From positions 62,001-126,000 of IMG/VR virus record IMGVR_UViG_3300044796_000662: a stretch of 64,000 bases of DNA; one strand, given 5' to 3'. The position numbers and the translations under genes are program-made. Every line of letters begins with the position of its first letter. The first letter of the stretch is position 1. The notes under the pieces were generated by a model. The model did no database searches, was not told the origin of the DNA, and saw only the letters and a program-made list of their open reading frames with translations. Positions 17,466 through 62,759 of this stretch are shown piece by piece.

Positions 17466-17476
17466 CCGGACCAGGG

Positions 17477-17504
17477 TTGATTCCTGCGGCGCTCGGGTTG
17501 TAGT
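17477..17504 (+). promoter_or_regulatory. Class-1 promoter TTGATTC-N11-GGGTTGTAGT
   Basis: Exact copy; ATG 6 nt downstream. Confidence 0.8.
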
Positions 17505-18074: not shown

Positions 18075-18098
18075 TTCCGGGCGGGCTTGGGTTGTAGT
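18071..18098 (+). promoter_or_regulatory. Class-1 promoter TTGATTC-N11-GGGTTGTAGT
   Basis: Exact copy; ATG 6 nt downstream. Confidence 0.8.
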
Positions 18099-38330: not shown

Positions 38331-41270
38331 TCAAGCGCGGGGGTACGGATAGATCGCCCCATCGCTCAGGTTGAGGTCCCTCAAGAGGCTTGCGAGCCGC
38401 TCTGGCATGACCTTCACCTGAAGACCCGGGTCGATGAGGATGTTGCCCACTGCATCCGTGAGGAAGAGGATCTTCCCCATGTCCGGGTCGCTCGCATCGG
38501 AGCACGCGGAGCGCACTTGCCTGACGGTCTGCCTCGTGAGCACGCTGACCTTCATCCAGACGATAGACGTGGAGGCCACGTCATCGCGTTTGATGGTCGT
38601 CTTGGGGGTCTCCATCCGGGGGGAGGGCGGCGGCCGCGGGGCCTCCGGAGTCGGCGCTACCTGAATCGAGACGTCCTCTACTGTGCTCACGGGGGCAGAG
38701 ACCGCGTGTCCAGCGGCCCCGTTCGTGTCCCCTCCGTTCTTGGGCGGTTCATGGCCGCCACCCTGCCATCCGGGGATGAAGAGCCCTTCAAGCCATGCGG
38801 GAACCCGGTGGTAGATCCGATCTCCCACCACAATCTCGATGTCCTTCGAGATGCCGCAGTCGCAGTTGGCCGCCCCCTCGCAGCCCTCGAAGTGCAGCCA
38901 GGCTCCTTCAGACCACTGCGTTGTCTTGTTCTCGTACTTCTTGTTCTTGCCGGCGTAGTTCTTCTTGCCCGAGTACGGCTTGCCGTGCATGAGCATCCCG
39001 TAGTCGTACTCACCGGCCCACGTCGTTCCGATGAGCGGCTCGACGATGAGGGGCACGCGCCAGACGGGCGAGTACGGGGGACGTGCCAAGCCTGACGGCG
39101 AGGCCATGACCCGGACGATGACCGCAAGGGCCTCCTGCACGCGAGCGTGCTTGATCTCGAACACGATTTCGTCGTGCACCGTGAGCAGCATGCGAACCGA
39201 GTCGTCTCCGCCGCCCTGCTTGAGCCAGCCGTGCTTGTAGAACTCCTTGCAGAGCAGCACGAGGCTGATCTTCATGATGTCCGCGCCGGTTCCCTGGATG
39301 GGGAAGTTCGTGCTCTTGCGCTCGCACGCCGCTTGGACGGCCTTATCCGGGTTGTCGATGTCCGGGATGGCCACCCAGCGCTGGAGAGCCGTGTACACGC
39401 CCTTGTCCTTGCGGACCTTGACGTGCTGACCCTTGATCCAGTTGGCGAAGGTCGGGACCGCCTTGTCGAACGCGCCTTTGCGGCGGGAGGCTTCCAGCTT
39501 GTCGCAGCCGGTCGCCCGCATGATCGCAGCCGGCCCGCCTCCGTACAAGAGCGCGAAGTTGGCGATCTTGCCCATCTTGCGCAGCTCCTTCTGCCGGTCC
39601 TTCGACTCCTTGTCGAACTCCGGGAAGAACGCGCGAGCCGTGATGGTGTGCAGGTCCCCGTCGCCTTCGAGGAACTCCTTGATCCAGACCATCTCGTTCG
39701 AGACGTTGGCTGCGATACGAAGCTCCTGACCGGCGTAGTCGGCCTTGAGCATCGTGTAGCCCTCGCGGGCCTCGAAGCACTTGCGCAGCTCCGAGGTCGA
39801 GGGGATGCCGTGGATGGGGATGCCCGACATCCCCTGATCTGCCTCTCCTGCGGGCGCAGAGAAGCGTCCCGTAGCGGCTCCAGTCTGCTTGAACTGGAAG
39901 CGCATCTCCGAGCGCTCGTCCACGTTGTTGTACATGTTCTGGAGGTACGTGGAGTCGAGCTTCTCGAACTCGCGCCACTTCACGATCCACTTGAGCACCT
40001 CGGGGACTCCCGGGTTCTCTTTGACGAGCGTCTCCAGCGTCTCGGCGTCCGTCTTGAACTGCTTGCTCGCCTCGTTGATGGGCGGCTTGGGGCTGATGTT
40101 GAGCCCCTTGTCCGAGAAGAGGAACTCGGAGAGCACCTTCGTACTGGCCGGGTCGAAGTTGAAGTAGCCCTTCGCTTCCGCAAGGTTCTTGATCTTGGCG
40201 AGGATCTCGTCGCGCTTCTTCGCGTTCTCGTCCATCGCGGCCTTGATGCGGTCGCGGTTGACCCGCACGCGAGGGCGTTCCATCCAACGGCCAGCGCACG
40301 CTGTCTGCTTCTCGACGCGATAGGTGAAGAGGTGCTTGTCGCGCACCTGCGCAAGCGTGAACGAACGCTTCTCATGTGAACGTGGCTGCGTGCAAAGCAG
40401 GTACGTGCAGATGGCATCCGAGCACGCGTACTTGAGGCAGCCGGGTTCATCCGGGGACAGGCGACCGAACTCGATCTTCGTCCCCTTGATGGGGAAGAGA
40501 TCTTTCAGCTCGATCATCTCGTACGGGTTGTTATCGGGGTCCCGCAGAAGCTCGAACGCCTTCCACTTGAGGCCAAGCTTCTTGTCGTCCGAGAAATGCG
40601 TGTAGTGGAAGAGGTTGCCGTCCTCAAAGCTCTCCGGATGCCACCAGTCGATGCCCGTGACCGGGTAGAGGAACTCGTGATCGAACTTGGCGTTCCAGAA
40701 GTACAGGAGCACCTTGGGGGGCTCCAACCACTCCTTGGCGGAGAGCGGGTCCTTCTCCATCGCCTCCGGCTTCATCACCGGCTGCGCGGCTCGACAGAGA
40801 CGTGTGATGGACGCCTCGGCACGCTCGACGGGCAGGTTCAAGCTCGGGCCGCCGTCATTCGGATTGTGACGCACGGGCGCGTAGAACCCGGACTTGCCGT
40901 CGTAGGAGAGGCAGAACCCCACGATCTTGTGCTTCGTGTATGGCTTGCCGCTCTCGTCGTAGAAGATGCGGTTGTCGAGACCCTCGGTTTCCAGGTCGAG
41001 AGCGCACTCCTTGGCGGCGATGGCCGCGTCCACGATCTGGTCAAGCTCGTCAGCCGTCCGGACGAGCTTGAACGTGTGGTGCTTCATCCAGGGCCGGGTG
41101 ATGTCCGGGACCGCACGCTCATTCTGGAGGCCCGCTGCCGCCATGAAGTCCTCCGGGGACTCCTCGGGCTCCGTCGAGATGATGGACGTAGCCGGCTTCA
41201 CCACCGGCCCTGGGCTCACTTCCGTAGAGAGCCCGAGCATCTCGTCAATGTCGTCGATCTCGTTGGGCAT
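38331..41270 (-). CDS. polA: Family A DNA polymerase with 3'-5' exonuclease
   Basis: LDLET, WNAKFD, YACSD; motif A ADYAGQELR, motif B RKMGKIANFALLYG, motif C TVHDEIV. Confidence 0.95.
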   Translation of the reverse strand: MPNEIDDIDEMLGLSTEVSPGPVVKPATSIISTEPEESPEDFMAAAGLQNERAVPDITRPWMKHHTFKLVRTADELDQIVDAAIAAKECALDLETEGLDNRIFYDESGKPYTKHKIVGFCLSYDGKSGFYAPVRHNPNDGGPSLNLPVERAEASITRLCRAAQPVMKPEAMEKDPLSAKEWLEPPKVLLYFWNAKFDHEFLYPVTGIDWWHPESFEDGNLFHYTHFSDDKKLGLKWKAFELLRDPDNNPYEMIELKDLFPIKGTKIEFGRLSPDEPGCLKYACSDAICTYLLCTQPRSHEKRSFTLAQVRDKHLFTYRVEKQTACAGRWMERPRVRVNRDRIKAAMDENAKKRDEILAKIKNLAEAKGYFNFDPASTKVLSEFLFSDKGLNISPKPPINEASKQFKTDAETLETLVKENPGVPEVLKWIVKWREFEKLDSTYLQNMYNNVDERSEMRFQFKQTGAATGRFSAPAGEADQGMSGIPIHGIPSTSELRKCFEAREGYTMLKADYAGQELRIAANVSNEMVWIKEFLEGDGDLHTITARAFFPEFDKESKDRQKELRKMGKIANFALLYGGGPAAIMRATGCDKLEASRRKGAFDKAVPTFANWIKGQHVKVRKDKGVYTALQRWVAIPDIDNPDKAVQAACERKSTNFPIQGTGADIMKISLVLLCKEFYKHGWLKQGGGDDSVRMLLTVHDEIVFEIKHARVQEALAVIVRVMASPSGLARPPYSPVWRVPLIVEPLIGTTWAGEYDYGMLMHGKPYSGKKNYAGKNKKYENKTTQWSEGAWLHFEGCEGAANCDCGISKDIEIVVGDRIYHRVPAWLEGLFIPGWQGGGHEPPKNGGDTNGAAGHAVSAPVSTVEDVSIQVAPTPEAPRPPPSPRMETPKTTIKRDDVASTSIVWMKVSVLTRQTVRQVRSACSDASDPDMGKILFLTDAVGNILIDPGLQVKVMPERLASLLRDLNLSDGAIYPYPRA

Positions 41271-41700
41271 CGTGCTCCTCCTGAACCAGGACCACGTACA
41301 CCCCTTCGCGCCAGCTCTTAACGATCTCTGACATCAATCGTCGCACTTCTGGGTCTTCCGACCCATCCGGCTCGTAGCACCACGGCATACGCTTGGCCGT
41401 TGGGAAACACCGGGCCTTATCGTAGAAAGGGCAGCGGTCGCGCAGTGTACATACACGCGCACTCTCAGGCAGCTTGATGAGGGCGCCCTGAGGTGGGAGC
41501 CCCAGCGACTTGACGAGTGGGCTCGTCCAACCGCGCAGAGCATGCTCGATCGTGTCCTTGGGAACGGTGGTGAGCAGGCTTGCGATCTCGTTACCCTGAA
41601 GAGGGCGCCAGTTCTGCTCCCAGACGCCCCCCTCATCGTAGATGAGGTACAGCTCCAGGAACCCCATCTCGGTTGTCGAGACCCTCAGTCGCCTGGACAC
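41245..41700 (-). CDS. Hypothetical protein with C-x5-C-x7-C-x9-C cluster
   Basis: Lies between the primase domain and polA and overlaps both; start uncertain. Confidence 0.62.
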   Translation of the reverse strand: MSRRLRVSTTEMGFLELYLIYDEGGVWEQNWRPLQGNEIASLLTTVPKDTIEHALRGWTSPLVKSLGLPPQGALIKLPESARVCTLRDRCPFYDKARCFPTAKRMPWCYEPDGSEDPEVRRLMSEIVKSWREGVYVVLVQEEHDAQRDRRH

Positions 41701-42329
41701 GACCGCACTACCTCGCCGATCTTGTCGAGCACCTGGCGAAGCACGACCTTCGCCTTCTCGTAGTCGATTTTGCGCTCATCGAGTCGATGACGTAGCCGGT
41801 CGAGAATGACCCCGAGCTTGAGGAATGGCACCATCTCGAAGTTGTGCTTCGCGCTCCGTAGCCGTTTCTCGCACGCCTCGAACAGAGTGGCGACTTCCAG
41901 AACGAGCGGGTCCTCCTCCGGCTCGTAGTCCCCGGACACGCCTTCCGGCATGGGAGGAGGCACGATGCCGTAGGCAGACTCGATGTCACGCAAGACCGCG
42001 GCGAACTTGAGGTCTTCGCGGCCATCGAACTTCTTCCAAAGTCCGATGGCGTCCCAGTTCTTCTGACAGACGAAGCACCAGACGTGACTCGGGCTGCGCG
42101 CCGATGCCTCGTAGACGCGAGCGGACGGCTTCGTGTCCCGACCATGGAAGGGGCAGGAGATCTGCTCCTCACGGCCGCCGTACTTGAGCCGGATGCCGTT
42201 GCGTGTGAGCACGTCGTGCGCCGTGACCGTCTGGTGGATGGTCGCCACCCGCTCGGCAATCCACTGACGCCAGACGTCATGACGCTCGTTACGCCGGATG
42301 TTCTGATCGAAGACGTTAGCCACGGTCAC
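41685..42329 (-). CDS. Stand-alone primase CHC2 zinc-binding domain protein
   Basis: SCPFHGRDTKPS...WCFVC...DAI; no TOPRIM domain. Confidence 0.82.
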   Translation of the reverse strand: MTVANVFDQNIRRNERHDVWRQWIAERVATIHQTVTAHDVLTRNGIRLKYGGREEQISCPFHGRDTKPSARVYEASARSPSHVWCFVCQKNWDAIGLWKKFDGREDLKFAAVLRDIESAYGIVPPPMPEGVSGDYEPEEDPLVLEVATLFEACEKRLRSAKHNFEMVPFLKLGVILDRLRHRLDERKIDYEKAKVVLRQVLDKIGEVVRSCPGD

Positions 42330-52001: not shown

Positions 52002-52295
52002 CTACTTGCTGTGGTCGTGAACCTCAGCGTTGTCGCTGACTTCCACCACGTGATGTTCTGGGGTGCGCTCAGGCAACTGAGCCGGGACCTTGTGAGGAGC
52101 CGGATGAGCCGGGTGCTCCGGCATCTTGCCATGCTCCCAGAGGTCCAGATCTGCCAGCCTCTTGTTCACCATGGCAGCGCTCTCGGGCGTCATCACGGTG
52201 TTCGTAAGGACCGCCCGCAGTTGGGTCCTGGCCCGCTCAGCGGCCTGCGCACGCACGCGGGGATTGAGCTGCAAGTAGGAGATGTGCTTGATCAT
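52002..52295 (-). CDS. Hypothetical protein
   Basis: TGATG overlap with the large tail gene. Confidence 0.65.
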   Translation of the reverse strand: MIKHISYLQLNPRVRAQAAERARTQLRAVLTNTVMTPESAAMVNKRLADLDLWEHGKMPEHPAHPAPHKVPAQLPERTPEHHVVEVSDNAEVHDHSK

Positions 52296-55200
52296 CAGAC
52301 CGCCCTCTGAGAGAGCGTGATGGTCGCCGGGTTCGTGTCGAGACGAACGTTGTCGTTCGTGATTGGGTGTCCGTCGAGGCGGTACAGGTCCGCCGCGGAG
52401 TACCCTTCGAGGGACCCGTTGGTGCTGATCTGCACGATACCTGCATGGGGGTTCGAATCCGTGAGCCTCTGCACGGTCGTCACGACCAGCATCATCAGCT
52501 CGTTGCCCGCACTGACCTCTTGCGCGCCGACGCTCGTTGGCATGTTGCGCACGAGGTAAGCACGGCCTTGCAGAACGTTGGTCGTTCCCGAAGGCGAGAT
52601 CACCACGGGATGCAACGTCCCCACTTCGCCGCCCGGGTTGGGGCCGCTCACGGTGAAGGCCGACCCACCACGGTTGACACGGTAGTTGACGAGGAGGGAG
52701 TAGTTCGTAGGCTCACCGTCAACCTGAGCGATGACTGCGCCTGCGTTGCCGGTCGCGGACGTCGCGGTGTCCAAGACAGCAGCCGTCTGCTCGTAGACCG
52801 TGGACGACGTCAGGTTCGAGAAGAGAACACCCTCCCCGATGTCGGGGAAGACGTTGAGCGCCGACAGATTCGTGAGGGGCTCACCTCGGAAGTCCTTGTC
52901 CCGGAAGAGCGCGCCGAGCGGCAGCCGCTCCGTCGCCCCGAGGTAGTCGGTAGCGACTTCCGGCGGGCTGGGGATGAAGCCCGTCAGAACGTTCGGCCTC
53001 GGCTGCGTCGAGGACGTCGGCGGGTACTGCAAGAAGTTCTCGATGCCGACGTTGCGGAAGTCCATGGGCAGCGAGCCCGTCTGAAGCCGCTGGTTGGCAC
53101 CAATCGGGCTGTCACCTGCGTAGCGCCCCGTCCCAAGGGTCGTCGCAAAGCCGACCGAGGCGAGGACTTGAAGGGCCTTCTGGTTCGGCCGCGTGAGCGC
53201 ACTCTGCGTCAGCTCCGTCGAATCGAGCTGGTAGGCAGTCGCCGTCTGAAGAGGCCCGAGAGCCTGCTGGACGTCGATGTAGTTCGTCTGGCTGCCCCAC
53301 GGGTCACCCTGGTACGGCGTGCGGCTGTAGTTGACCAGCATCGAGTCCGTGGCCGTTGCCGGGCCAGGGAGAACGCTCGTCGGACCTGCGATGGGCAGGT
53401 TGATGTTCGCCGAGTTGTCCGAGCCTGCATTGATCGCCTGCGTACGGTTACGCGACAGAACGATGCGGCACTCTTGCGAGATGTCGAAGGCGCTGCGGTC
53501 GAACCCGAAGACGCTCGCTTCGATGATGTAGTTGCCCGCCGCGAAGTTCGCGATCGGGTTCACAGTCGAGCGGGTGATGTCGATCGAGTTCGCGTTCAAG
53601 ATGAACGTCGAGTCGCCGTCCTGGTCGATCTCGATCCAGAAGGTGGCGGTCGAGTTGTCCTGACGGAGCAGGTTGGTCGCCCCTGCGCCACGAGCCGTAC
53701 GGTCCGGACCGTTGTAGGCCGAGCCGTTGAGCTTGTAGTCGCCAGCCTCGTACACGGCGAAGAGCCGTGCGATGCCGTAGAAGGGCGGCAGTTGCAGACC
53801 TTGGCGTCCAAGGTTGCGCGTGTCCGAGAAGAACTGCATACCGGCGAACTCAAGGCCGCCGACGAGGTACTTCGTGTTGTACGTCGCCGGTCCAGGGGTC
53901 GGGGTTGCGTAGTTCGTCGTGCTGAACACAGCCCACGTCAGGCCACCCAGGGAGGCGTAGGAGACGTAGTTGCTGCTCCCGACAGGGGGCGTGGCGCCCT
54001 TGTTCGAGAGCAACATGAAGTTGATGCCCTCGTTGAAGGTCGAGTTGTCCCCGTGGAGGATGGGCACGTCCACCTCGCCCCAGTTCGGGACGAAGCTACG
54101 CGGCAGCGTGATGTACACGTTGCGCGTGTTGGGGTTGTCCGTGTTGCCCGAGAAGATCTGGAGCGGGTCGGTGGTGGTCCACTTGGGGGTCACACCGTCC
54201 TGCGCCTTCAGAGGCATGAGCCCTTGCGCGACGTTGACCGTGTAGATGAGACCCGAGCCTGTAGCGACAGGACGGTCAAGCGTGACGCTCGTAGAGCTGG
54301 AGTACGCCTTGATCGTGTAGCGTCCAGGCTGCGGCCCTGAGCCTAGCTGAAGAGCGTAGCCCACCATGCCGGACGTAAAAGGTGCCGACGAATCCGTGAA
54401 GGTCGTGCCGCCAGAGGTCGCACCTGTGGAGCTAGTCACCACAGCCGCCTGCGTGGACACGTTGGCTGCCGTGCCGTCGATCGTGGTCGCCGTTGCCGGC
54501 CAGATGATCTGGCGGAACGGTTGGATGACCACGGACTTGGAGCCAAGGTCCGCGTAGGTCGAGGTCGTGACCGGAAGATTCATCCGGTAGGGGGTGTTGC
54601 GGTACTTGCTCCAGAGCAGAACCCAGCTCGTGTTCACCGGAATGTTCGACGCAGGCGCGCCCACCGGGTTGAGCAGAAGCTCCGTGCTCGGAGTCGTGAA
54701 GGTGATGTTCTGAACCGACGTGGGACGACGAGCGAGGCCGCGTCCCGCACCGTACATCACGTTCAACGTGACGTAGATGTTGTTGGAGGTCGCCGGGAAC
54801 CCAGCCGCGAAAATAACCCAAAGGTCATCGTTGGGCGTCAGGTTCGGACCTTGGATGTAGCCGCCGCTCGTGTAGGCGCCCGAGAAGGACGAGCCGTTGA
54901 GCGTGAAGTGCGTGGGGTCGATGACCGTGACGGTCCAGATGGCGTTCGCAGCCGAGACGCCCACAACACCCGTGATCTTGACGATCTGGTTGGTCACCAG
55001 CCCGTGCGGGAACGAGGTGGTGATCTCGATCAGACCGCTGTTATTCGTGACGTTGGACACACCCGGAGAAGAGGGTGTCGCACCGCCCACCGAGCTGGAG
55101 CCGACCACCGTGTACAGCGTGTTCGGGATCGGTGCCGTCTGCCCGTCGATGCGAAGTGTGACCGCGGTGTGGAGGCTGTCGAAGACCCACCGGATCTGGT

Positions 55201-56857
55201 CCGCGTCACCGCCAGAAACGCCTGTCTTGAGGGACGAGACCGGGAAGACGATGATGTCGTTGGGACCGAAAGTGCTTGCGGTGTTGCCGACGCCACGGAA
55301 GGTCTGGTTCGCAGCAATCGTCAGCGAGTAGGTGGCATCTGCCACCGAGGCCGGCGGCGTAGCGCTGGTCGGGTCGATCACCATCTCGACCTTCTGCATC
55401 GTCGCAGCGTCCGAGAAGATCATCCGGATGTTGTCCGGAGCGTCCAGCTTGTTGATGCCGAGGGAGGCCGACGAAGACGAGATCTTGTCCTGGTAGTTGA
55501 CGAAGGGTCCCTGAGGTCCCGCGCCCGAGCGCTTCCAGGTCCCTTGCAGGTTGCCGCGAAGCAGCCTGTCGAGCCCCTGCGCCAGAACCGACTCGTAGTC
55601 GAACCCGTTGGGGTTCACGACGTGACGGAGATCGAGCAGGTCGGTCCGAGCGATCTGGTCCGAGAAGAGCCCATCCGGACGACCCGAGATGACCGTGATC
55701 GTGGAGTTGGCCACGTGCTGTTCCGCACGCGAACCGTTCACACCACGGGTCAGGCCGCCGAGCGTTGTGCCCGTGATGGCCGAGTACGTCATGTACTCGT
55801 CGCCGATCTTGATGAGGACAGGCGTCGAGGGCGTTGCCGGCAGCGGGATGTTCGTGGCCGAGACAAGCGTTGCGCTCGTAGACGTAGCCGAGAGGGTGCT
55901 CGCGATCTGCGGCACCGTGGAGAACGTCTTGAACCCCGTCGCATCGACCGCAAGCGGGTTGCGGTTGAAGCCGCCGTTGAGGTTCTGGGACGGATCTCCG
56001 TTCCAGGCGCTTGCGTTGCGACGGAAGACCGCAGAGAGCGGGATGGCGTACGTGTACCCATCCACCGTTGCGAGGGTGTTGGAAGTGTTCCCATCGCCCG
56101 CACGCCAGAGACCAGGGTCTCCGAGTGCCGAGCGCATGTTCGAGAACGTGTACGTGGTCGGAGAAGCCGAGGTGCCCTGACCGAAGACGGTCGTGGGGTC
56201 GAAGCCGTCAGGGTTCGTTGAAAGACCGACGATGCCCGGAACGACTCGAATGCGGTACTGGAGCTGAACACGCTCGGTCGTTTCGAATCCGATGGACGGA
56301 TCCTGGATGTCGTCCGCCAGGTAGCTCATGCCACCGAGGACGTTGCCGTACGTGTAGATGGCCGAAACCGAGGGCTTGTTCAGTGACGACGGGTTCGGTG
56401 GGACGCGCGCAAGCCACGCTTCGAGGAAGACGAAGTCGATGCGCGTGTCGCCCGCGTTGTTCGGCGGCGGGTTCATCGCGACGACGTTGTACGTGTCCAC
56501 GTTGTCCGGAGAGCCCGGAGGCGTGCCGGTGAGCGTGCCCGTGACAGGGATGAGCCAGCCGTTGACGACGGCCCACTCGACCGCCTGGGACTCACCCGTG
56601 CGCTGACGACCAAACCTCCACCAGTTCGACCACGTGGGGTTCGTGATGAGCGCAGCGGAGTTGTTGGTCTCGTTGCCGAGCCATCCCGAAGGCGTACCGC
56701 GAGAAACGAGGATCTGTTGCCAGTTGCTCGCGAGGTCCTGGAGGAGATTCAGCTCCGCATCGAGCGGGGGCTTGCCTTGCTGCCAGATGACATCAAGGAA
56801 CTGCCTCGCAATCGGGCTGAGAACCCTGCTGGTCCCGGGACCATAGTTGTTGCCCAT
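52295..56857 (-). CDS. Large baseplate/tail structural protein (1520 aa)
   Basis: N-terminal WQQGKPPLDAELN (DUF6519-like); S/T/G/N-rich beta repeats. Confidence 0.8.
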   Translation of the reverse strand: MGNNYGPGTSRVLSPIARQFLDVIWQQGKPPLDAELNLLQDLASNWQQILVSRGTPSGWLGNETNNSAALITNPTWSNWWRFGRQRTGESQAVEWAVVNGWLIPVTGTLTGTPPGSPDNVDTYNVVAMNPPPNNAGDTRIDFVFLEAWLARVPPNPSSLNKPSVSAIYTYGNVLGGMSYLADDIQDPSIGFETTERVQLQYRIRVVPGIVGLSTNPDGFDPTTVFGQGTSASPTTYTFSNMRSALGDPGLWRAGDGNTSNTLATVDGYTYAIPLSAVFRRNASAWNGDPSQNLNGGFNRNPLAVDATGFKTFSTVPQIASTLSATSTSATLVSATNIPLPATPSTPVLIKIGDEYMTYSAITGTTLGGLTRGVNGSRAEQHVANSTITVISGRPDGLFSDQIARTDLLDLRHVVNPNGFDYESVLAQGLDRLLRGNLQGTWKRSGAGPQGPFVNYQDKISSSSASLGINKLDAPDNIRMIFSDAATMQKVEMVIDPTSATPPASVADATYSLTIAANQTFRGVGNTASTFGPNDIIVFPVSSLKTGVSGGDADQIRWVFDSLHTAVTLRIDGQTAPIPNTLYTVVGSSSVGGATPSSPGVSNVTNNSGLIEITTSFPHGLVTNQIVKITGVVGVSAANAIWTVTVIDPTHFTLNGSSFSGAYTSGGYIQGPNLTPNDDLWVIFAAGFPATSNNIYVTLNVMYGAGRGLARRPTSVQNITFTTPSTELLLNPVGAPASNIPVNTSWVLLWSKYRNTPYRMNLPVTTSTYADLGSKSVVIQPFRQIIWPATATTIDGTAANVSTQAAVVTSSTGATSGGTTFTDSSAPFTSGMVGYALQLGSGPQPGRYTIKAYSSSTSVTLDRPVATGSGLIYTVNVAQGLMPLKAQDGVTPKWTTTDPLQIFSGNTDNPNTRNVYITLPRSFVPNWGEVDVPILHGDNSTFNEGINFMLLSNKGATPPVGSSNYVSYASLGGLTWAVFSTTNYATPTPGPATYNTKYLVGGLEFAGMQFFSDTRNLGRQGLQLPPFYGIARLFAVYEAGDYKLNGSAYNGPDRTARGAGATNLLRQDNSTATFWIEIDQDGDSTFILNANSIDITRSTVNPIANFAAGNYIIEASVFGFDRSAFDISQECRIVLSRNRTQAINAGSDNSANINLPIAGPTSVLPGPATATDSMLVNYSRTPYQGDPWGSQTNYIDVQQALGPLQTATAYQLDSTELTQSALTRPNQKALQVLASVGFATTLGTGRYAGDSPIGANQRLQTGSLPMDFRNVGIENFLQYPPTSSTQPRPNVLTGFIPSPPEVATDYLGATERLPLGALFRDKDFRGEPLTNLSALNVFPDIGEGVLFSNLTSSTVYEQTAAVLDTATSATGNAGAVIAQVDGEPTNYSLLVNYRVNRGGSAFTVSGPNPGGEVGTLHPVVISPSGTTNVLQGRAYLVRNMPTSVGAQEVSAGNELMMLVVTTVQRLTDSNPHAGIVQISTNGSLEGYSAADLYRLDGHPITNDNVRLDTNPATITLSQRAV

Positions 56858-56910: not shown

Positions 56911-57564
56911 TTAGTACAGAAGCGCCCAGCTACCGACCCAGAGCGTGCTCGCACTCGCGTTCGTGATCTGAACGATGAGCTGATTGCTCTGATCGGGGGC
57001 AGGAACGTTCCCAGGGGCACTGTCCACCGCAGCCACGTAATTGGCGCCGTTGTTGAAGCTCACCTGAGCAGTCGTGTACGCGCCCGTCGTCGGCAGCTCG
57101 TTGTAGTTGCGCATGAAGCGGCTGTTACTGGGGTCCGTCGTCACGAAGTTGAAGACCTCCCAGGTGAAGAGGAAGGCCGAGGGCGTCGAAGCGAGGGTCT
57201 GCACGTTGCTCGTGAGCGTTGCCCCAGGCGCCAGAGAGATCGTGCTGCGCTGCCCGAACGTCCCCTTCGTGTTCGAGGCGCTCAGGTTGACACCGCTCGT
57301 ATCGAGCAGGTCGTCGTAGATGACGTGCGTGAAGCCCGCGTAGATCGAGAGAAGCCCCTCGTACTTCTTCGTGAGAAGGTCCCCACAGTTCGTCGGGATC
57401 GCTGGGTTGCCCGTTGATGGGTCGATCAGCGGGATGTTCTTGGGGAGCCGGACAACGAAACCGCCGTTGAGAAGCGTCTGGTTGTTCTCGGGCGTGTCCA
57501 CGCCGATGATCGGGGACGAGGCCACGGGGCTCGTGAAGGCATCGATCAGGTAGTGCTCGCTCAT
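56911..57564 (-). CDS. Virion structural protein (beta-rich)
   Basis: S/T/N-rich, within the tail cluster; GAGGA SD. Confidence 0.7.
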   Translation of the reverse strand: MSEHYLIDAFTSPVASSPIIGVDTPENNQTLLNGGFVVRLPKNIPLIDPSTGNPAIPTNCGDLLTKKYEGLLSIYAGFTHVIYDDLLDTSGVNLSASNTKGTFGQRSTISLAPGATLTSNVQTLASTPSAFLFTWEVFNFVTTDPSNSRFMRNYNELPTTGAYTTAQVSFNNGANYVAAVDSAPGNVPAPDQSNQLIVQITNASASTLWVGSWALLY

Positions 57565-57639
57565 CTACATCCTCGCGATCCCTCCCCTATCAGTGGAATC
57601 GTGATGTAGGATAGCTACCCACCCTAAAGAGGGGTCAGG

Positions 57640-57667
57640 TTGATTCGGGACCGTCTTGGGTTGTAGT
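57640..57667 (+). promoter_or_regulatory. Class-1 promoter TTGATTC-N11-GGGTTGTAGT
   Basis: Exact copy upstream of the lipoprotein gene. Confidence 0.8.
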
Positions 57668-57688
57668 TCCTGTGGAAGGAGCCCGATC

Positions 57689-59077
57689 ATGTGGTGCAAT
57701 TTTTTGGGGGTCTCGGCGGCGGTTGTTTTCTCGGCGGTTCTCGCGGGATGCGGAGGCGCACCGTTCACGGCGGGTGACGCTGTCGGTGACCCCCCGGACT
57801 CTGGCGCTGGCACGGTCGATTCCGGATGCTGCGGCGACGTTCTGAGCCCCGAGGCGGGCCAGGACTCGCAGCCGACCCCCGAGGCCGGACAGGACTCGAA
57901 CCCCGGCCAGGGCCAGGACAGCGGCTCCTGCGTGACCTGCCAGGACGCGGCTCCCGAAGCGGCTCCTCAAGACAGCGGTCACGTCGAGACGGACTCCGGC
58001 TCCTCGAACCATGACAGCGGAACGGACCAGGACTCTGGCACGCCGGATTCCGGCACCGTTCTCTCGGACTCGGGCACGACCTCGCAGGACTCGGGCACGA
58101 CGACCCTTGACAGTGGGACTGGATGCTCGACCGGCGAGACCCTCTGCAACGGTTCCTGCCAGCCTGGCGTCTGCGTCCTCGCGACCGGCACGGTGGGCTC
58201 CTACAACTCCGGGATCGCGGTGGCCTCCGGCTCTGTGTTCTGGTCTTCGTCAACGGCGGTCCTGGACGAGCCGACTTCGGGCGGTTCGCCTTCTACCTTC
58301 GTCCCGAGCGCCAGCGAGTACGTCGCTGTGGACGCCACGAACGTCTACTGGACGACCTCGGACTCCGTCCTCAAGTCTCCGCTGATTGGCGGAAGCGTCA
58401 CCACGCTCGCTACAGGGTTGAAGACTCCCATGGGCATCACCGTGGACGCCGCGAACGTCTACTGGACCAACCAGGGCACCCTGAACAATGACGGCACGGT
58501 GGTGAAGTGCGCGAAGAGCGGGTGCAATCTGCTTCCCACGGTGCTCGCGGCCGGACAGAGTGACCCTGAGGGTATCGCCGTAGACGCCACGAACGTCTAC
58601 TGGACCAACATCAACCCCTCGGATGCCACCAGCGGTTCTATTGCGAGCGTGTCGATTGGCGGCAGCATTCCGACCACGATCGCCACGAACCAGTTCAACC
58701 CTGTCGCTGTTGTCTCGGATGGAACGAACCTGTACTGGACCAACACCGGGGACAACTCCGCCGCCAACGGTCAGATTGTGGAGTGTGTGATCGGGTCTTG
58801 TGCCGGCACGCAGGTCGCTCTCGCAATCTCGCAGCATCGCCCGTACGGTCTCGTCGTGGATGCAACGAACGTGTATTGGACCAACGTCGGCACGACCACC
58901 GCGAACTCCGGCTCCGTCCTGAGCGTTCCGATCTCCGGCCAGGGTCAGGTGGCCCCCAAGGTTCTTGCTTCTGGTCAGGGTGAGCCCACGAGCCTCACCA
59001 TGGATGCATCGAACCTCTACTGGATCGACATCTACCAGAGCGCTGTCGGTCCCACGGTGAACAAGGTCGCGAAGTAG
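57689..59077 (+). CDS. Host-like lipoprotein: DSG-rich linker and 7-repeat beta-propeller
   Basis: GGAAGGAG SD, lipobox LAGC, more than 10 DSG repeats, seven (V/S/M)DA(T/A/S)N(V/L)YW-type repeats. Confidence 0.85.
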   Translation: MWCNFLGVSAAVVFSAVLAGCGGAPFTAGDAVGDPPDSGAGTVDSGCCGDVLSPEAGQDSQPTPEAGQDSNPGQGQDSGSCVTCQDAAPEAAPQDSGHVETDSGSSNHDSGTDQDSGTPDSGTVLSDSGTTSQDSGTTTLDSGTGCSTGETLCNGSCQPGVCVLATGTVGSYNSGIAVASGSVFWSSSTAVLDEPTSGGSPSTFVPSASEYVAVDATNVYWTTSDSVLKSPLIGGSVTTLATGLKTPMGITVDAANVYWTNQGTLNNDGTVVKCAKSGCNLLPTVLAAGQSDPEGIAVDATNVYWTNINPSDATSGSIASVSIGGSIPTTIATNQFNPVAVVSDGTNLYWTNTGDNSAANGQIVECVIGSCAGTQVALAISQHRPYGLVVDATNVYWTNVGTTTANSGSVLSVPISGQGQVAPKVLASGQGEPTSLTMDASNLYWIDIYQSAVGPTVNKVAK

Positions 59078-60166
59078 TTACTGCGTCCAATCGACGCGCA
59101 GGTACCCAGGCCCACCGACACCACCTGCGCGTCCAACTCGGCTTGCAGTCGCATCGTCTTGGATGCCACCACCGCCACCACCACCGCCACCGACAAGCCC
59201 GGGAGAACCGTTAGCCGAACTGGCGTACACGCCGCCCGCACCACCGTTGCCACCGGCCGTACCTGGAACGTTACCAGCCCCACCGCCACCACCGCCCATA
59301 GCAGTGCCGAAAGTGTAGCTCGTCGAACCGCCACTTCCGAAAGCAGTGCTACCACCGATGACCGCAGGCTGACCTGTGGTGCCTATCGCGAAGTTGGTAA
59401 GGTCGTTCGATCCGAGACCGCCGGCCGAGGCAACCGTTGGGAGGAAAGGCGGCACGGTGGTGTTGTATCCCGGTGCCCCGTTGGAAGTCGCGGGACTGCC
59501 ACCCGGCGAGTAGGCTGTACCGCTGTTGCTTCCGATCCCTCCCGAGCCTCCTTGGCCACCCGTTGCGAGAATGTTACCGCCCCAAGTGGTGCTGCCACCA
59601 TTACCCCCGCTCTGACCGTTACCGTCCGGAGCAGTGCCACCGTTGCCGCTCGTCCCACCAGCCCCAACGATGATGATGTACGAGGAACCGGGTGCGATGG
59701 CCGGGGTCGTGGTCGAGTCCAAGATCAGGCGGGTTGCCAAAGCTCCGGCCCCACCCCCACCACTTCCGCTCTTGTTGGTACCCGACAAGAGCGTTCCGCC
59801 CGACCCACCGCCGCCACCGCCGCCACCGCACGCTGTCACAACAACGCTCGTCACACCCGCAGGGACGTAGAATGCGAAGCGCCAGGTGATGGTGCCGGGG
59901 TCCTCGATCACCGCGCTCGGGTTGTAGACGATGGCCTCGTAGATGGACGAGACAGCGATGATGGGGAAGGTACCGTTGTTGACCGAGTTGGCTGCCCCCG
60001 AAAGAATGAGGGACTGTCCAATCATCGTGTTGTTCATGGTCCCAGAACCATCCGGGTTCTGAAGACCGCCAACGGCCATACCGATGCCGCCGAACTGGCC
60101 AACGGCCGGAACGTAGCCCGTAGAGGCAAAGCGAGAGGTGAAAATAGCGTAGTGCGAGCGTGCCAT
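59078..60166 (-). CDS. Glycine-rich tail fibre/virion protein
   Basis: ACGGGGGGG and GGGGGGAG repeats; start MARSHY after GAGG. Confidence 0.75.
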   Translation of the reverse strand: MARSHYAIFTSRFASTGYVPAVGQFGGIGMAVGGLQNPDGSGTMNNTMIGQSLILSGAANSVNNGTFPIIAVSSIYEAIVYNPSAVIEDPGTITWRFAFYVPAGVTSVVVTACGGGGGGGGSGGTLLSGTNKSGSGGGGAGALATRLILDSTTTPAIAPGSSYIIIVGAGGTSGNGGTAPDGNGQSGGNGGSTTWGGNILATGGQGGSGGIGSNSGTAYSPGGSPATSNGAPGYNTTVPPFLPTVASAGGLGSNDLTNFAIGTTGQPAVIGGSTAFGSGGSTSYTFGTAMGGGGGGAGNVPGTAGGNGGAGGVYASSANGSPGLVGGGGGGGGGIQDDATASRVGRAGGVGGPGYLRVDWTQ

Positions 60167-60173
60167 GTTTACC

Positions 60174-62759
60174 TCAGCTCGATGAAACGAACCAGTTGGT
60201 CCCATCCGACGTGAGCTGCCAGGTACCCCAGGCAGAATCCAACAGGTACGGACCCGTAGTACCGTTGATGGTCTGAGACCCCGTGGGCAGAAGCAAAAAC
60301 GGGTAAGTCCCAAGGTTGCCGGTCTGGTCGATGAAGGCCACGCGGCGACCGGCGTACTTCCCAGCGGTCAAATCTGGCAGAGTGAACGTGATCGCGGCAA
60401 CGCCCGTTTGCAGGAAGACAGTGGCGTCGTCGTACCCCGCAGAGTCCAACGAGTACGGGCCGGTGGACGGACCGCAAACACGTGTGTTGCTGTAGGGCGT
60501 CCGACCTTGAAGGACGTACCAAGAGGTTCCGTCGCACTCCAGGATGTACTGAGCGTTGGGGCTTGTGAGCGGGTAGGTAGTGTGACCCTGAATGAGTTCT
60601 GCGCTCTTCGCCGTGCCGCCGCTCACGTACGCGTTGACGAACGTGGTCCCGTCGAGCAGGAAAGTGAACGAGTCAATCACAGTGACGAAGAAGGTACCGT
60701 TCGCTTCTGTCGTGCCGGTGACCCCAGAGATGGTCACCTGTCCGTGCGTGACGAAGGTGTGCGAAGCCGTGAAGACTTCGATCTGACCACCTGCACCCGA
60801 GACGATGTTGCTGACTGCGACCGCACCGCCCGTACCGTTGAAAGGCTGCAACGTGACTGCGGAAGACGTGCTCACGGAGCTGTCCGTCATCAGGTAGATG
60901 CGCTGACCCGACCTCGTGTAGGGGTCCTGAAGATTGAAGTTGGAGCTACCTGATCCCGTGAGCGTGACCGTCGAGTCACCCTGCTGGAGGTTCGTGCCGC
61001 CAGAAGCCTTGCGGACAGCGAAACGGTCGTTGATGTACCCCAGGAGGAACGAGAGCTGCACGCCGAGCGCGTACTCGGGCAGGTTGTAGGGCGGGCTCAA
61101 GCCCGTGCCGCTGTTCGCAATCGCCCCCGAGCCGACACGATCGCTACCCGAAGTGGAGAAGTACGACGCCGTTGCCGACTGCGCCGTATACGAACCCGTG
61201 TAGGTCGAGCTGAAGAGCGTGTAGTGAGTCGAATCGATCCGCGTCGCTGCCCAACCGCCGTTGAGCACCATGCCGCCGGACGTCACCGCGCCCGAGATGA
61301 CGAGGTACAACACAGACGAGAAGGGGAACGCCGGCAAGAGAGGCTCTTGCGTGTGGATCTGGATGAGACCACCGTTGTTGGAGACGTCGAGGACAGTGGT
61401 CCCCACGAGGGTCCCGTACTGGAACGTGCCCCCGCCGATGTAGTTTTTGTTGAACGTCGAGCTTTGCAGGTCGTAGGTGTACGCGTTGATCTGCGTGACG
61501 ACCCACAACCCGTTGGCTTCCCCGGCACCAGAAACGTTCTGGATGATGACGTGACTACCCGTGGGGACGCTGACACTGGAGGCCAGCGTCACACGAATGA
61601 GCCCAGACCCATTGTTTGCAACGTTGACGATCTGAGCGTTACCACCCGTCTGGCTGCCCATCGCAGAGACGAAGCTCTCGATGAGGCTCTGCACCGAGCC
61701 CGCGGTCGGAGCCCCTGGACCCTGAGAAACGGTGGGTGTGGTGCCGTCTGCAAGAGTCGCGAGCGTCTGGCGAGCGCCGATACGGTCGCTACCCGTGGCC
61801 AATGCCCAGGAGATTTGCGGAAGGGAGCCCGTTGCGGTGAAGGTGGTCGGGCCAGGGAAGTTGGCCGTCAGCACGATAGCCGTACCCGTAACACTGAGCA
61901 CCGTGGCCGAGTAGTACGTGCCGCTGCAATCGAACAGGATGATGTCGCCCGGGATGATGACACCCGTCTGACTGGTGGTAGCCGTGACGTTCGGGCTCAA
62001 GCCCACGACACTGAACGTACCGGAGAGCGGGACACCGATGTCCGTGACAGCGCTGGCCCAAGACCCGCCCGGAACTGACGCGGAGAACTGGCTCGTTGGC
62101 GTCAACGGGAACGTCCCATTGTTGCCCGCGTGCACTGAATCGTAGACGGTGATGTTCCAGCCGTAGTAGTTCAGCCAGTTCGAACCGAGGTTGATGCCCT
62201 GGATCAGGACGTTCGGACCACCGGCCACGATGGACATGGCGGTGCCGCTCGTCTCCTGAGCCAGCATCCGGATCACCTGATCGAGCAGGTTTTGGAGCGT
62301 ACCGGCGCCCGTGTTCAAGCTCGGGGCGAGACCGTCCACGAACGCCACGTCGAGAGACGACGCACCGATCGCGCTCATGCCCTGTGTACCAGTCGGGGAA
62401 CCGAGCTGCGTGATCAAGTTCTCAAGCAGCGCTTGGAGTGTGCCACCCGTGACCGTGTTGCTGTTTGCGAGAGTTGCGGTCGTCGGGCTCGTACCGCTGA
62501 TCCTGTCCGCAGCGGAGTGCAGACGGGTCAGGTTGGTCAGGTCCGTGATGAACTTCGTGAGCTGCGCCCCGACGTTCGTTGCGGGGTTCGTGGTCCCGTC
62601 CAACCAAGGGCCGTCACCGACCCAAGAGACCTGGCTCGCAAGAGCAGCTCCACCACCGCCGCCGCTGGGGGCGAGGAGTGCCGAAGCCGGAACCGTGCCG
62701 ACCGAGAGCTTGCCCGGCCCCGGGTTGACCGAGGAAAGGGGGTCAGAAGTGGACGGCAT
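60174..62759 (-). CDS. Tail fibre/receptor-binding-like protein with repeated beta modules
   Basis: Repeated I....G...NG.(W/F).VT.I...(Y/F).L modules; C-terminal pair of ~60-aa repeats. Confidence 0.78.
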   Translation of the reverse strand: MPSTSDPLSSVNPGPGKLSVGTVPASALLAPSGGGGGAALASQVSWVGDGPWLDGTTNPATNVGAQLTKFITDLTNLTRLHSAADRISGTSPTTATLANSNTVTGGTLQALLENLITQLGSPTGTQGMSAIGASSLDVAFVDGLAPSLNTGAGTLQNLLDQVIRMLAQETSGTAMSIVAGGPNVLIQGINLGSNWLNYYGWNITVYDSVHAGNNGTFPLTPTSQFSASVPGGSWASAVTDIGVPLSGTFSVVGLSPNVTATTSQTGVIIPGDIILFDCSGTYYSATVLSVTGTAIVLTANFPGPTTFTATGSLPQISWALATGSDRIGARQTLATLADGTTPTVSQGPGAPTAGSVQSLIESFVSAMGSQTGGNAQIVNVANNGSGLIRVTLASSVSVPTGSHVIIQNVSGAGEANGLWVVTQINAYTYDLQSSTFNKNYIGGGTFQYGTLVGTTVLDVSNNGGLIQIHTQEPLLPAFPFSSVLYLVISGAVTSGGMVLNGGWAATRIDSTHYTLFSSTYTGSYTAQSATASYFSTSGSDRVGSGAIANSGTGLSPPYNLPEYALGVQLSFLLGYINDRFAVRKASGGTNLQQGDSTVTLTGSGSSNFNLQDPYTRSGQRIYLMTDSSVSTSSAVTLQPFNGTGGAVAVSNIVSGAGGQIEVFTASHTFVTHGQVTISGVTGTTEANGTFFVTVIDSFTFLLDGTTFVNAYVSGGTAKSAELIQGHTTYPLTSPNAQYILECDGTSWYVLQGRTPYSNTRVCGPSTGPYSLDSAGYDDATVFLQTGVAAITFTLPDLTAGKYAGRRVAFIDQTGNLGTYPFLLLPTGSQTINGTTGPYLLDSAWGTWQLTSDGTNWFVSSS

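What the first reader, a model, noticed from the sequence alone, without database searches (positions are those of the whole stretch)
57640..59077. Myxobacteria-style surface lipoprotein inserted antisense in the tail cluster under an early-type promoter
Seen: lipobox LAGC, a Ser/Thr/Asp linker with more than 10 DSG repeats, a Cys-rich hinge and seven VDATNVYWT-like repeats. It is the only plus-strand gene in the tail block, has its own class-1 promoter, and its stop abuts the stop of the convergent tail gene with 0 nt gap. Recalled: such DxG linkers and DATxVYWT propellers are typical of Polyangiales lipoproteins. Inference: a host-derived moron, possibly masking the receptor (superinfection exclusion) or altering cell-cell recognition in a social bacterium. 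It is also the best clue to the host.
Basis: partly seen in the sequence, partly recalled or inferred. Interest (0 to 1): 0.62.

Follow-up and report, generated by a model that had tools for sequence, protein, structure and literature searches.

The report
Phage lipoprotein beside variable tail fibre
A giant peat-soil phage carries, back-to-back with its most variable tail-fibre gene and under its own promoter, a 462-residue membrane-anchored propeller protein of a type otherwise found mainly in Polyangiaceae myxobacteria; this points to the host, and the protein probably blocks the phage's own receptor on infected cells.

Summary
The gene runs ATG 57689 to TAG 59077 on the + strand (462 aa). 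It has a lipobox (LAGC, Cys21), a disordered spacer with 11 DSG, a four-Cys knot and seven YW repeats. These fold with high confidence into a propeller like the YWTD propellers of LDLR/LRP6.

Its promoter, GTTGATTC-N11-GGGTTGTAGT, occurs 16 times in the 363-kb record. Fifteen copies lie in the two non-structural arms. The only copy inside the minus-strand structural block drives this gene. Its stop abuts the stop of a convergent tail-fibre gene.

New findings:
- The gene is not a recent insert. Four related phage contigs carry a lipoprotein-propeller in the same antisense slot. Two of them have the same promoter and ribosome-binding site, and a third has a diverged version of the promoter.
- The propeller is only 34-42% identical between these phages, while backbone proteins are 64-92% identical. 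It appears to travel with the neighbouring fibre genes as a cassette.
- Close cellular relatives are concentrated in Polyangiaceae: 26/151 genomes, against 0/301 Acidobacteriota and 0/301 Pseudomonadota.

The best reading is a lipoprotein that blocks the phage's receptor or excludes superinfection, comparable to T5 Llp or Ltp but of a new type. This function is inferred, not shown, and expression timing is untested.

The parts
57565..57638 (.). Divergent intergenic region between the 217-aa tail gene (-) and the lipoprotein promoter. It is well conserved in L019; of the CCCACCC..AGAGG element just upstream of the -35, only the CCCACCC core also persists in L021.
   Evidence: Alignment of three phage contigs. 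These motifs are unique in the record.
57639..57667 (+). Promoter of the recurrent phage class GTTGATTC-N11-GGGTTGTAGT. It has sigma-70-like geometry: TTGATT, 16 nt, TGTAGT.
   Evidence: 16 copies in the record and 0 in the reversed control. 15 copies lie in the two mixed-strand arms, and this is the only one inside the structural block. The same motif stands upstream of the lipoprotein in L019 and L108, and a diverged form in L021.
57674..57681 (+). Shine-Dalgarno sequence GGAAGGAG, 7 nt before the ATG.
   Evidence: Read from the sequence. Conserved in L019 and L108.
57689..57751 (+). Signal peptide with lipobox LAGC. Cys21 is the predicted lipidated first residue of the mature protein, followed by Gly-Gly.
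   Evidence: Translation. The hydrophobic region, L-x-G-C and GG are invariant in the four aligned phage homologues.
57752..58123 (+). Disordered Asp/Ser/Thr/Gly/Pro spacer of about 125 aa with 11 DSG and two Cys pairs (47/48, 81/84).
   Evidence: Motif counts. pLDDT is below 50. A 21-nt tandem unit repeated 2.6 times lies at 58044-58098. Spacer length varies among homologues.
58124..58174 (+). Four-Cys knot (C146, C153, C157, C162) joining the spacer to the propeller.
   Evidence: 88-96% identical among own, L019 and L021, although their propellers are about 37-41% identical. L108 and L115 have expanded versions.
58175..59077 (+). Seven-repeat YWTD-like beta-propeller (residues about 163-462) with two intra-blade CxxxxC pairs, followed by stop TAG 59075-59077.
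   Evidence: AlphaFold2 gives pLDDT above 90 and 28 strands. Foldseek matches LRP2, LRP6, LDLR and nidogen propellers at E 1e-11 to 1e-13. More than 2,471 homologues were found.
59078..60313 (-). Convergent tail-fibre gene (fibre A) with a C-terminal Gly_rich_2 domain. Its stop abuts the lipoprotein stop. The true start is probably at residue 37 (about 60205).
   Evidence: Pfam PF21722 at E 1.6e-7. Atlas neighbours are tail-fibre clusters carrying Phage_fiber_2, Phage_tail_fib and Gly_rich_2. Only the N-terminal part (residues about 50-160/200) is conserved in L019 and L021; L108 gives no blast match.
60174..62759 (-). Fibre B (861 aa) with E1_FCCH-like domains. The N- and C-termini are conserved and the centre is swapped among relatives.
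   Evidence: Fibre B is missing together with fibre A and the lipoprotein in L110.
56911..57564 (-). Conserved 217-aa tail-block protein, divergently oriented from the lipoprotein gene. I used it as the backbone marker for relatives.
   Evidence: 64-70% identical in L108 and L019, 42% in L021. 44 homologues were found, on contigs up to 570 kb.

Best explanation
The gene encodes an exported phage lipoprotein built in three parts: an N-terminal lipid anchor (Cys21), a disordered acidic Ser/Thr/Gly spacer of about 125 residues ending in a disulfide knot, and a seven-bladed YWTD-type propeller that acts as a protein-binding head.

It is transcribed on its own, from a sigma-70-like phage promoter class that otherwise serves only the non-structural arms. 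Its expression is therefore uncoupled from the tail operon in which it sits antisense, and is probably earlier.

Inferred mechanism: after Sec export and lipidation, the protein is tethered in the envelope of the infected cell, most likely a Polyangiaceae myxobacterium. There the propeller binds the envelope component recognised by the adjacent fibre tip. This makes infected cells and their debris refractory to phages of the same receptor specificity, as in the lytic conversion and superinfection exclusion of T5 Llp. Because lock and key must match, the lipoprotein and the fibre genes diversify and are exchanged together as a cassette.

Shown: gene anatomy, fold, promoter class, conserved position, hypervariability, and taxonomic affinity.

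Inferred: export and lipidation, timing, ligand, and the exclusion phenotype.
For: Anatomy:
- Lipobox, spacer, knot and repeats are present.
- The propeller model is confident and YWTD-like.
- After removing the signal-peptide Cys3 and the lipid-acceptor Cys21, 12 Cys remain in local pairs. This fits an oxidising, extracytoplasmic location.
- The signal peptide, lipobox and GG are invariant in four phage homologues; a fifth (L115) has a related signal peptide with an atypical lipobox.

Own transcription unit:
- The promoter has 16 copies, and this is the only one inside the structural block.
- Promoter and ribosome-binding site are conserved in L019 and L108.

Link to the fibres:
- The gene is convergent and abuts the fibre whose C-terminal tip is a Gly_rich_2 domain.
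- Backbone neighbours are 64-92% identical in relatives, but the propeller is only 34-42%. The fibre A tip and the fibre B centre are not conserved.
- In L110 the lipoprotein, fibre A and fibre B are missing together.
- L019 and L021 share 68-69% identical fibres although their backbone is 42% identical, and their lipoproteins pair in the tree (91/91). Own and L108 both have Gly_rich_2 tips, and their lipoproteins pair as well (94/93).

Precedent:
- T5 Llp is a lipoprotein gene adjacent to the receptor-binding-protein gene. It is expressed early and blocks the receptor (PMC9586334).
- Ltp is a lipid anchor plus a serine-rich spacer plus a repeat domain (PMC3952083).

Host.
Against: - No experiment or expression data bear on function. 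The only RNA library holding the region does so as a 34-kb contig, which cannot separate RNA from carried-over DNA, or the two strands.
- There is no sequence or fold relation to Llp, Cor or Ltp.
- The cassette argument rests on four or five genomes. Forcing the backbone-congruent grouping is only borderline worse (p-AU 0.051), and I named the grouping after seeing a first tree.
- 'Early' is inferred only from where the other 15 promoters lie. Their genes have no known function.
- This copy's signal peptide has no basic residue in its n-region, although homologues do.
- Beta-propellers are also common in virion proteins.
- The receptor is unknown.
Confidence: 0.45

Rival explanations
1. Decoy or receptor mimic. 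The host's own surface propeller lipoproteins are the phage receptor, and the phage copy binds the fibre tip itself. It would hold incoming phages away from the membrane on its long spacer, or compete with the true receptor.
For: The phage protein belongs to a paralogue family hugely expanded in Polyangiaceae: 42 matches in one 8.6-Mb MAG. About 35 of 81 cellular homologues have a lipobox-like N-terminus. The phage propellers are as close to cellular ones (up to 45-46%) as to each other. The gene co-varies with the fibre tip.
Against: A surface decoy would also trap progeny after lysis. Co-folding of the propeller with the fibre tip gave no answer (score 0.12), which is not evidence either way. 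No receptor is known.
Confidence: 0.1
2. Host-behaviour modifier unrelated to the receptor. The lipoprotein would alter adhesion, outer-membrane exchange, kin recognition or signalling in a social myxobacterium (lysogenic or lytic conversion of another kind).
For: The family is myxobacterial. It has a weak relation to the Myxococcus signal-integration protein model SinM (E 1e-10, far below cut-off). It has an independent promoter.
Against: This does not explain the conserved position against the fibre tip, the joint loss with the fibre pair, or the grouping by fibre type. No literature on SinM was retrievable.
Confidence: 0.12
3. Virion or assembly protein: a propeller adhesin or receptor-binding component of the tail, or a fibre-assembly factor, whose hydrophobic N-terminus is not a functional signal peptide.
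For: Propeller folds are common among phage structural proteins. There is a very weak Pfam hit to a phage receptor-binding propeller platform (E 0.09-1.3). The gene is located in the fibre block.
Against: - The gene lies on the opposite strand with its own promoter class, which is not used by any other structural gene.
- The lipobox Cys and hydrophobic region are strictly conserved.
- It has a disordered spacer of about 125 aa.
- Its 12 paired Cys would not form disulfides in the cytoplasm, where tails assemble.
Confidence: 0.07
4. Passenger gene: a captured host lipoprotein with no role for the phage.
For: The family is of cellular type.
Against: - The reading frame is intact in five diverged phage contigs; the lipobox in four (atypical in L115), and the promoter in three.
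- Its composition has drifted to match the phage's.
- The slot is conserved down to 42-45% backbone identity.
Confidence: 0.03

Closest known systems
Phage T5 Llp (lytic conversion lipoprotein) and the related Cor lipoproteins of T1/phi80-type phages
   Same: A phage-encoded lipoprotein whose gene lies next to the receptor-binding or tail-fibre gene. It is expressed separately from the late genes. It blocks the phage's own receptor, so that infected cells and debris no longer adsorb phage (PMC9586334). The gene position beside the fibre tip and the independent promoter are seen here.
   Different: Llp and Cor are small single-domain proteins acting at the periplasmic face of FhuA. This protein has 462 aa, a spacer of about 125 aa and a seven-bladed propeller. 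No sequence or fold similarity was found. The host is presumably a myxobacterium, and function and timing are untested.
Ltp of Streptococcus thermophilus phage TP-J34 (superinfection-exclusion lipoprotein)
   Same: The same three-part design: lipid anchor, serine-rich spacer and a repeat domain that does the excluding. Ltp is surface-tethered (PMC3952083).
   Different: Ltp sits in the lysogeny module of a temperate Gram-positive phage. It has a different repeat domain, and its reported target is the incoming phage's tape-measure protein. Here the head is a beta-propeller and the gene sits in the fibre block of a giant phage.
YWTD (LDL-receptor class B) beta-propellers of LDLR, LRP2, LRP6 and nidogen
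   Same: Repeats of about 43 aa with a YWT[NDT] motif, and top structural matches at E 1e-11 to 1e-13. These domains are protein-binding platforms.
   Different: The model has seven repeats and 28 strands, against six blades in the solved animal propellers. The Pfam Ldl_recept_b score is below the gathering cut-off (16.4 against 21 bits). The protein is bacterial or phage, and lipid-anchored.
Unnamed family of propeller (lipo)proteins expanded in Polyangiaceae (partly annotated DUF5050, Ldl_recept_b or Vgb_lyase)
   Same: 35-47% identity over the propeller, the same seven-repeat unit, often a lipobox, and sometimes D[ST]G spacers and Cys knots.
   Different: The cellular copies are not next to phage tail genes, and their loci have higher GC (median 0.671 against 0.624). 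The phage copies share a conserved anchor, spacer and knot of their own.
Myxococcus SinM (NCBIfam NF037948)
   Same: The only curated family with a significant hit (E 1e-10, five repeat stretches). It is a myxobacterial repeat protein.
   Different: The score of 41.5 bits is far below the 250-bit cut-off, so this is repeat-level similarity only and not membership.

Membership tests
Bacterial lipoprotein (signal peptidase II substrate) | N-terminal signal peptide with a hydrophobic core, followed by lipobox [LVI][ASTVI][GAS]C | tested here: met
   MWCNFLGVSAAVVFSAVLAGC. L-x-G-C-G-G is invariant in four phage homologues. L115 has an atypical lipobox, QTGC. This copy's n-region lacks a basic residue.
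Bacterial lipoprotein (signal peptidase II substrate) | Actual lipid modification and cleavage | not testable with these tools
   Needs globomycin sensitivity or lipid labelling.
YWTD / LDL-receptor class B propeller (PF00058) | Score above the Pfam gathering threshold | tested here: not met
   16.4 bits against a 21-bit cut-off, E 0.013, on the propeller alone. No hit on the full protein at E<=0.01.
YWTD / LDL-receptor class B propeller (PF00058) | YWTD-type repeat motif and propeller fold | tested here: met
   Five YWT, one YWI and one FWS repeat. Foldseek top hits are LRP2, LRP6, LDLR and nidogen at probability 1.00.
YWTD / LDL-receptor class B propeller (PF00058) | Six blades | tested here: not met
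   Seven sequence repeats and 28 strands in the model. Alignments to six-bladed targets cover about 245-265 of about 300 residues. I could not inspect the coordinates directly.
SinM (NF037948) | Score above the curated cut-off of 250 bits | tested here: not met
   41.5 bits.
Llp/Cor-type receptor-blocking lipoproteins | Phage lipoprotein gene adjacent to the receptor-binding or fibre gene | tested here: met
   The stop abuts the stop of the Gly_rich_2 fibre gene. The same arrangement occurs in L019, L021 and L108; in L115 a 143-aa antisense gene lies between.
Llp/Cor-type receptor-blocking lipoproteins | Sequence or fold homology to Llp or Cor | tested here: not met
   No such family appears in the Pfam or PHROGs scans, even at E<=10. 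The fold is a propeller.
Llp/Cor-type receptor-blocking lipoproteins | Early expression and blocking of the phage's receptor | not testable with these tools
   The promoter class suggests separate timing. The RNA library was uninformative.
Ltp-type exclusion lipoproteins | Lipid anchor, Ser-rich spacer and repeat domain | tested here: met
   Architecture, compared with PMC3952083. This is an analogy of design only.
Ltp-type exclusion lipoproteins | Homology of the repeat domain | tested here: not met
   No Ltp-like family hit. The fold is different.
Moron (independent accessory transcription unit in a phage operon) | Own promoter | tested here: met
Moron (independent accessory transcription unit in a phage operon) | Own terminator | tested here: not met
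   No terminator-like site at the convergent junction. The stops abut.
Moron (independent accessory transcription unit in a phage operon) | Present in some relatives and absent in others | tested here: met
   Present in own, L019, L021, L108 and L115. Absent in L109, L110 and L111.
Moron (independent accessory transcription unit in a phage operon) | Composition deviating from the phage (recent acquisition) | tested here: not met
   Propeller GC is 0.624 against 0.626 for the genome. Only the spacer is higher, at 0.70.

The most novel reading that the evidence does not exclude
The fibre tip and the lipoprotein form a portable 'key and lock-cover' cassette. The phage's receptor would be one of the host's own hypervariable surface propeller lipoproteins. 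The phage-encoded homologue would replace, cap or out-compete that receptor. In a social myxobacterium that shares outer-membrane lipoproteins between kin, it could spread to neighbouring cells, so that exclusion acts on the whole swarm rather than on the single infected cell.
Probability: 0.08. Interest if true: 0.85.

Novelty: new variant of a known kind. Interest (0 to 1): 0.57.

Why it matters
- It gives a testable host assignment (Polyangiaceae, the bacteria with the largest known genomes) for a clade of peat and soil phages. This clade's contigs reach 447-570 kb and it has no cultured member.
- If the function holds, it extends receptor-blocking phage lipoproteins from small single-domain proteins to a large, modular, tethered propeller. 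That propeller is swapped together with fibre tips.
- Such a gene pair would be a useful marker for reading receptor specificity from sequence. It would also be a handle for finding the unknown receptor by pull-down.
- The recurrent promoter, which often sits exactly one leaderless distance from the ATG, is a ready-made map of one temporal gene class in an uncultured giant phage.

Tried and rejected
- Pfam, NCBIfam and PHROGs on the lipoprotein gave no family above cut-off.
- The GenBank phage collection gave no match by DNA or by protein.
- Sequence search of fibres A, B and the 1,520-aa protein against PDB chains found nothing.
- IMG/VR and JGI metagenome scans with the 217-aa neighbour returned only the same phage and the already known relative. 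The word-index protein search was needed to find more.
- The 61-sequence alignment was too diverse for the genome scan, so I used the three-phage alignment instead.
- Cluster look-ups gave almost no organism names.
- Literature searches for SinM/SinK, for myxophage lipoproteins and for Polyangiaceae phages in peat found nothing usable.
- Co-folding the propeller with the fibre tip gave no verdict (score 0.12 against a mark of 0.34). It is not evidence for or against binding.
- Reads: the RNA run holds the region only as a long contig, so it shows no start, strand or expression level.
- L023, an IMG/VR contig with a homologue, has 71% GC and no related tail genes. I treated it as host-like DNA and did not pursue it.
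- L021's bacterial-looking flank matches Polyangiaceae genomes at 64-73% nucleotide identity. These are conserved genes and I ran no out-group comparison, so this is not decisive.
- The BFVD fold search gave only generic propellers.
- Genes behind the other class-1 promoters have no Pfam family, so 'early' could not be backed by function.
Full report
**Where the window lies.** The window is bases 62,001-126,000 of a 362,937-bp IMG/VR record labelled 'provirus', with CheckV completeness 76%. Both ends of the record look phage-like rather than bacterial. Few proteins there have Pfam families. Those that do include an Acb1-like 2H phosphoesterase, an LPD1 domain and a 1,294-aa DUF6094 methyltransferase. 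The middle is one long minus-strand block. It includes a baseplate-wedge homologue (phrog_6, E 1e-23) and a helicase. The same proteins occur on a 569,965-bp contig, and relatives occur on contigs of 447-536 kb. The record carries 54 tRNA and tmRNA genes. It is therefore part of a very large phage. Public runs holding it are peat metagenomes.

**The observation.** The plus-strand ORF opens at 57656. The convincing start is ATG 57689, 7 nt after GGAAGGAG. The 462-aa product has:
- a signal peptide ending in lipobox LAGC (Cys21);
- 11 DSG triplets in an Asp/Ser/Thr/Gly/Pro stretch;
- a four-Cys hinge (146, 153, 157, 162);
- seven aromatic-Trp repeats.

Its TAG stop (59075-59077) is followed at once by the reverse-strand stop of gene 59078-60313. 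Within the fibre block it is the only convincing plus-strand gene. The one adjustment is that 57640 marks the promoter, not the coding start.

**Fold.** With an alignment of 60 homologues, AlphaFold2 models residues about 170-462 at pLDDT above 90. The model has 28 strands, that is seven four-stranded sheets. Residues 1-150 are disordered. Foldseek against the PDB returns YWTD propellers: LRP2, LRP6, LDLR, ApoER2 and nidogen, plus the designed Pizza6 propeller, at E 1e-11 to 1e-13. Pfam's Ldl_recept_b model scores below its cut-off. The only curated hit is the Myxococcus SinM model, at 41.5 bits against a 250-bit cut-off. The domain is YWTD-like but is not a member of any curated family, and it appears to have seven blades rather than six. 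After the signal-peptide Cys and the lipid-acceptor Cys, twelve Cys remain in local pairs, which suits a protein that folds outside the cytoplasm.

**Promoter.** The sequence just upstream, GTTGATTC-N11-GGGTTGTAGT, occurs 16 times in the record and never in the reversed control. Each copy stands directly before an ORF. Fifteen copies lie in the two mixed-strand arms (2-80 kb and 317-359 kb of the record). The sixteenth is the lipoprotein's, alone inside the structural block. The geometry is sigma-70-like (TTGATT, 16 nt, TGTAGT), although the generic consensus scan does not find it. In nine copies an ATG follows exactly 6 nt after TAGT, which implies leaderless mRNAs. The lipoprotein instead has a 21-nt leader with a strong ribosome-binding site. 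The genes behind the other copies have no known family. 'Early' therefore remains an inference from position and promoter type.

**Relatives.** A word-index search found more than 2,471 homologues of the propeller, the best at 43% identity. Two nearly full-length hits sit on contigs with the same gene order as the window. Searching with the conserved 217-aa neighbour found more members of the phage clade. A lipoprotein-propeller occupies the same antisense slot in L019/L020, L021, L108 and L115. A 299-aa antisense gene occupies the slot in another contig for which no DNA was available. The slot is empty in L109, L110 and L111. L019 and L108 keep the same promoter and ribosome-binding site, and L021 has a diverged version.

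**What varies and what does not.**
- Against L019 and L108, backbone proteins are 64-92% identical. The lipoprotein is 37-40% identical over its length.
- Fibre A keeps only an N-terminal part (residues about 50-160/200; L019, L021), and fibre B only its two ends.
- Within the lipoprotein, the knot is 88-96% identical among own, L019 and L021. The anchor and spacer are about 50% identical. The propeller is 34-42% identical.
- In L110 the lipoprotein, fibre A and fibre B are missing together.
- L019 and L021 have 68-69% identical fibres A and B although their backbone protein is only 42% identical. This shows that the fibre module moves between lineages.
- The propeller tree pairs L019 with L021 (91/91) and own with L108 (94/93). 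The second pair both carry Gly_rich_2 fibre tips.
- Forcing the backbone-congruent pair (own with L019) costs 11.9 log-likelihood units, p-AU 0.051. This is suggestive, not significant, and I chose the grouping after seeing a first tree.

Taken together, the lipoprotein behaves as part of a fast-evolving, exchangeable fibre cassette.

**Taxonomy and host.**
- A scan of one genome per prokaryotic species with two short motifs returned 164 confirmed loci. Of the best 80, nearly all are Myxococcales, Polyangia or Polyangiaceae MAGs, many from fen and peat. The exceptions are a few Nitrospirota, plus single Acidobacteriaceae, Anaerolineales, Gammaproteobacteria and Micrarchaeota records.
- That scan is biased by its seeds, so I also searched evenly drawn genome samples with the propeller at E<=1e-25. 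The results were 26 of 151 Polyangiaceae and 5 of 301 Myxococcota, all five of them members of that family sample. There were 0 of 301 Acidobacteriota and 0 of 301 Pseudomonadota.
- One Polyangiaceae MAG has 42 matching stretches, against 1-4 in the non-myxobacterial genomes.
- About 35 of 81 cellular homologues have a lipobox-like N-terminus. Roughly a tenth have four or more D[ST]G triplets. None has phage tail genes nearby.
- An independent phage gene, a transglycosylase conserved in this phage clade, has its few named cellular relatives in Sandaracinus (Polyangia) and a 'Deltaproteobacteria' MAG.
- The trees are star-like. No donor can be named, and monophyly of the phage copies is neither shown nor rejected (p-AU 0.375).
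- The propeller's GC equals the phage's and is lower than that of the cellular loci.

I conclude that the gene family is of Polyangiaceae type, that the host is probably in or near that family, and that the capture is old.

**Mechanism.** The design is a lipid anchor, a long flexible spacer and a protein-binding head. It is the design of the Ltp exclusion lipoprotein (PMC3952083). The position against the receptor-binding end of a fibre gene, under separate control, is that of T5 Llp, which blocks the phage's own receptor (PMC9586334). The joint variation and joint loss with the fibre genes is what a matched receptor-binder and receptor-blocker pair would show. I therefore favour receptor masking or superinfection exclusion, at a confidence of about 0.45.

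The junction has no terminator. Lipoprotein transcripts therefore probably run antisense into fibre A, and tail-operon transcripts probably run antisense through the lipoprotein gene. This could sharpen a temporal switch, but it is inference.

The rivals are a decoy that binds the fibre itself, a modifier of social behaviour, a virion component, and a passenger gene. The evidence against the virion reading is the opposite strand, the promoter class, the conserved lipobox, the spacer and the paired Cys.

**What I could not settle.** Timing, lipidation, localisation, ligand and phenotype all remain open. The one RNA library that holds the region holds it as a 34-kb contig identical to the DNA, which may be carried-over DNA. 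The co-fold of propeller and fibre tip gave no verdict.

**Verdict.** Its taxonomic reading is supported. 'Recently inserted moron' should be replaced by 'conserved accessory gene of a fibre cassette'. The proposed exclusion role gains circumstantial support but remains untested. If it holds, this is a new variant of a known kind of phage function.

Noticed in passing
Window 16724-16752(-), 17438-17466(-), 17476-17504(+), 18070-18098(+), 57639-57667(+), plus 11 more in the record outside the window: In 9 of the 16 copies of the promoter GTTGATTC-N11-GGGTTGTAGT, an ATG follows exactly 6 nt after TAGT. These genes would be made from leaderless mRNAs. The other copies, including the lipoprotein's, have leaders with strong ribosome-binding sites.
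   Followed up: partly
Whole record G000 (window = 62,001-126,000): The 'provirus' label looks doubtful, because both arms are phage-like. The same proteins occur on a 569,965-bp contig, and relatives sit on contigs of 447 and 536 kb. This is a clade of very large peat and soil phages.
   Followed up: partly
Record G000, about 269,000-300,000 and 21,351-21,503 (outside the window): ARAGORN finds 54 tRNA and tmRNA genes. They include a tmRNA (tag ANDNGVAQARAA) and a tRNA with anticodon CTA that would read TAG. Gene density under the standard code is about 90%, so general recoding seems unlikely. The lipoprotein gene itself ends in TAG.
   Followed up: no
L021:5002-7605(-), on a 13-kb contig at 1.1x coverage: One 867-aa ORF joins the N-terminal half of a biotin carboxylase to the C-terminal part of the phage's 1,015-aa fibre protein. 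Beside it lie phospholipase C, LexA and pyruvate:ferredoxin oxidoreductase genes. This is either an assembly chimera or a bacterial chromosome that has kept the fibre-plus-lipoprotein cassette.
   Followed up: partly
Window 52295-56857(-), 60174-62759(-); L019, L108: Domains scoring as ubiquitin-E1 FCCH (PF16190) recur in the large fibre proteins. The N-termini of the 1,520-aa and 1,015-aa proteins are paralogous (about 33-38% identity).
   Followed up: no
Record G000 40,405-41,904(-), 52,036-53,769(-), 353,620-357,504(-) (outside the window): The arms hold an Acb1-like 2H phosphoesterase (a possible anti-CBASS function), a peptidoglycan transglycosylase conserved across the phage clade, and a 1,294-aa DUF6094 methyltransferase-like protein that sits behind a class-1 promoter.
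   Followed up: partly
L115:555-986(-): In one distant relative, a second antisense gene (143 aa, no Pfam family) follows the lipoprotein gene in the same slot. The slot seems to collect antisense cargo.
   Followed up: no
Window 59165-59192 and 59805-59829: Many short metagenome contigs from several peat runs join or break at these two places inside the Gly-rich fibre gene. The inserted letters are GC-rich and Gly-coding. This suggests population-level variation or repeat-driven assembly breaks in the fibre tip.
   Followed up: no
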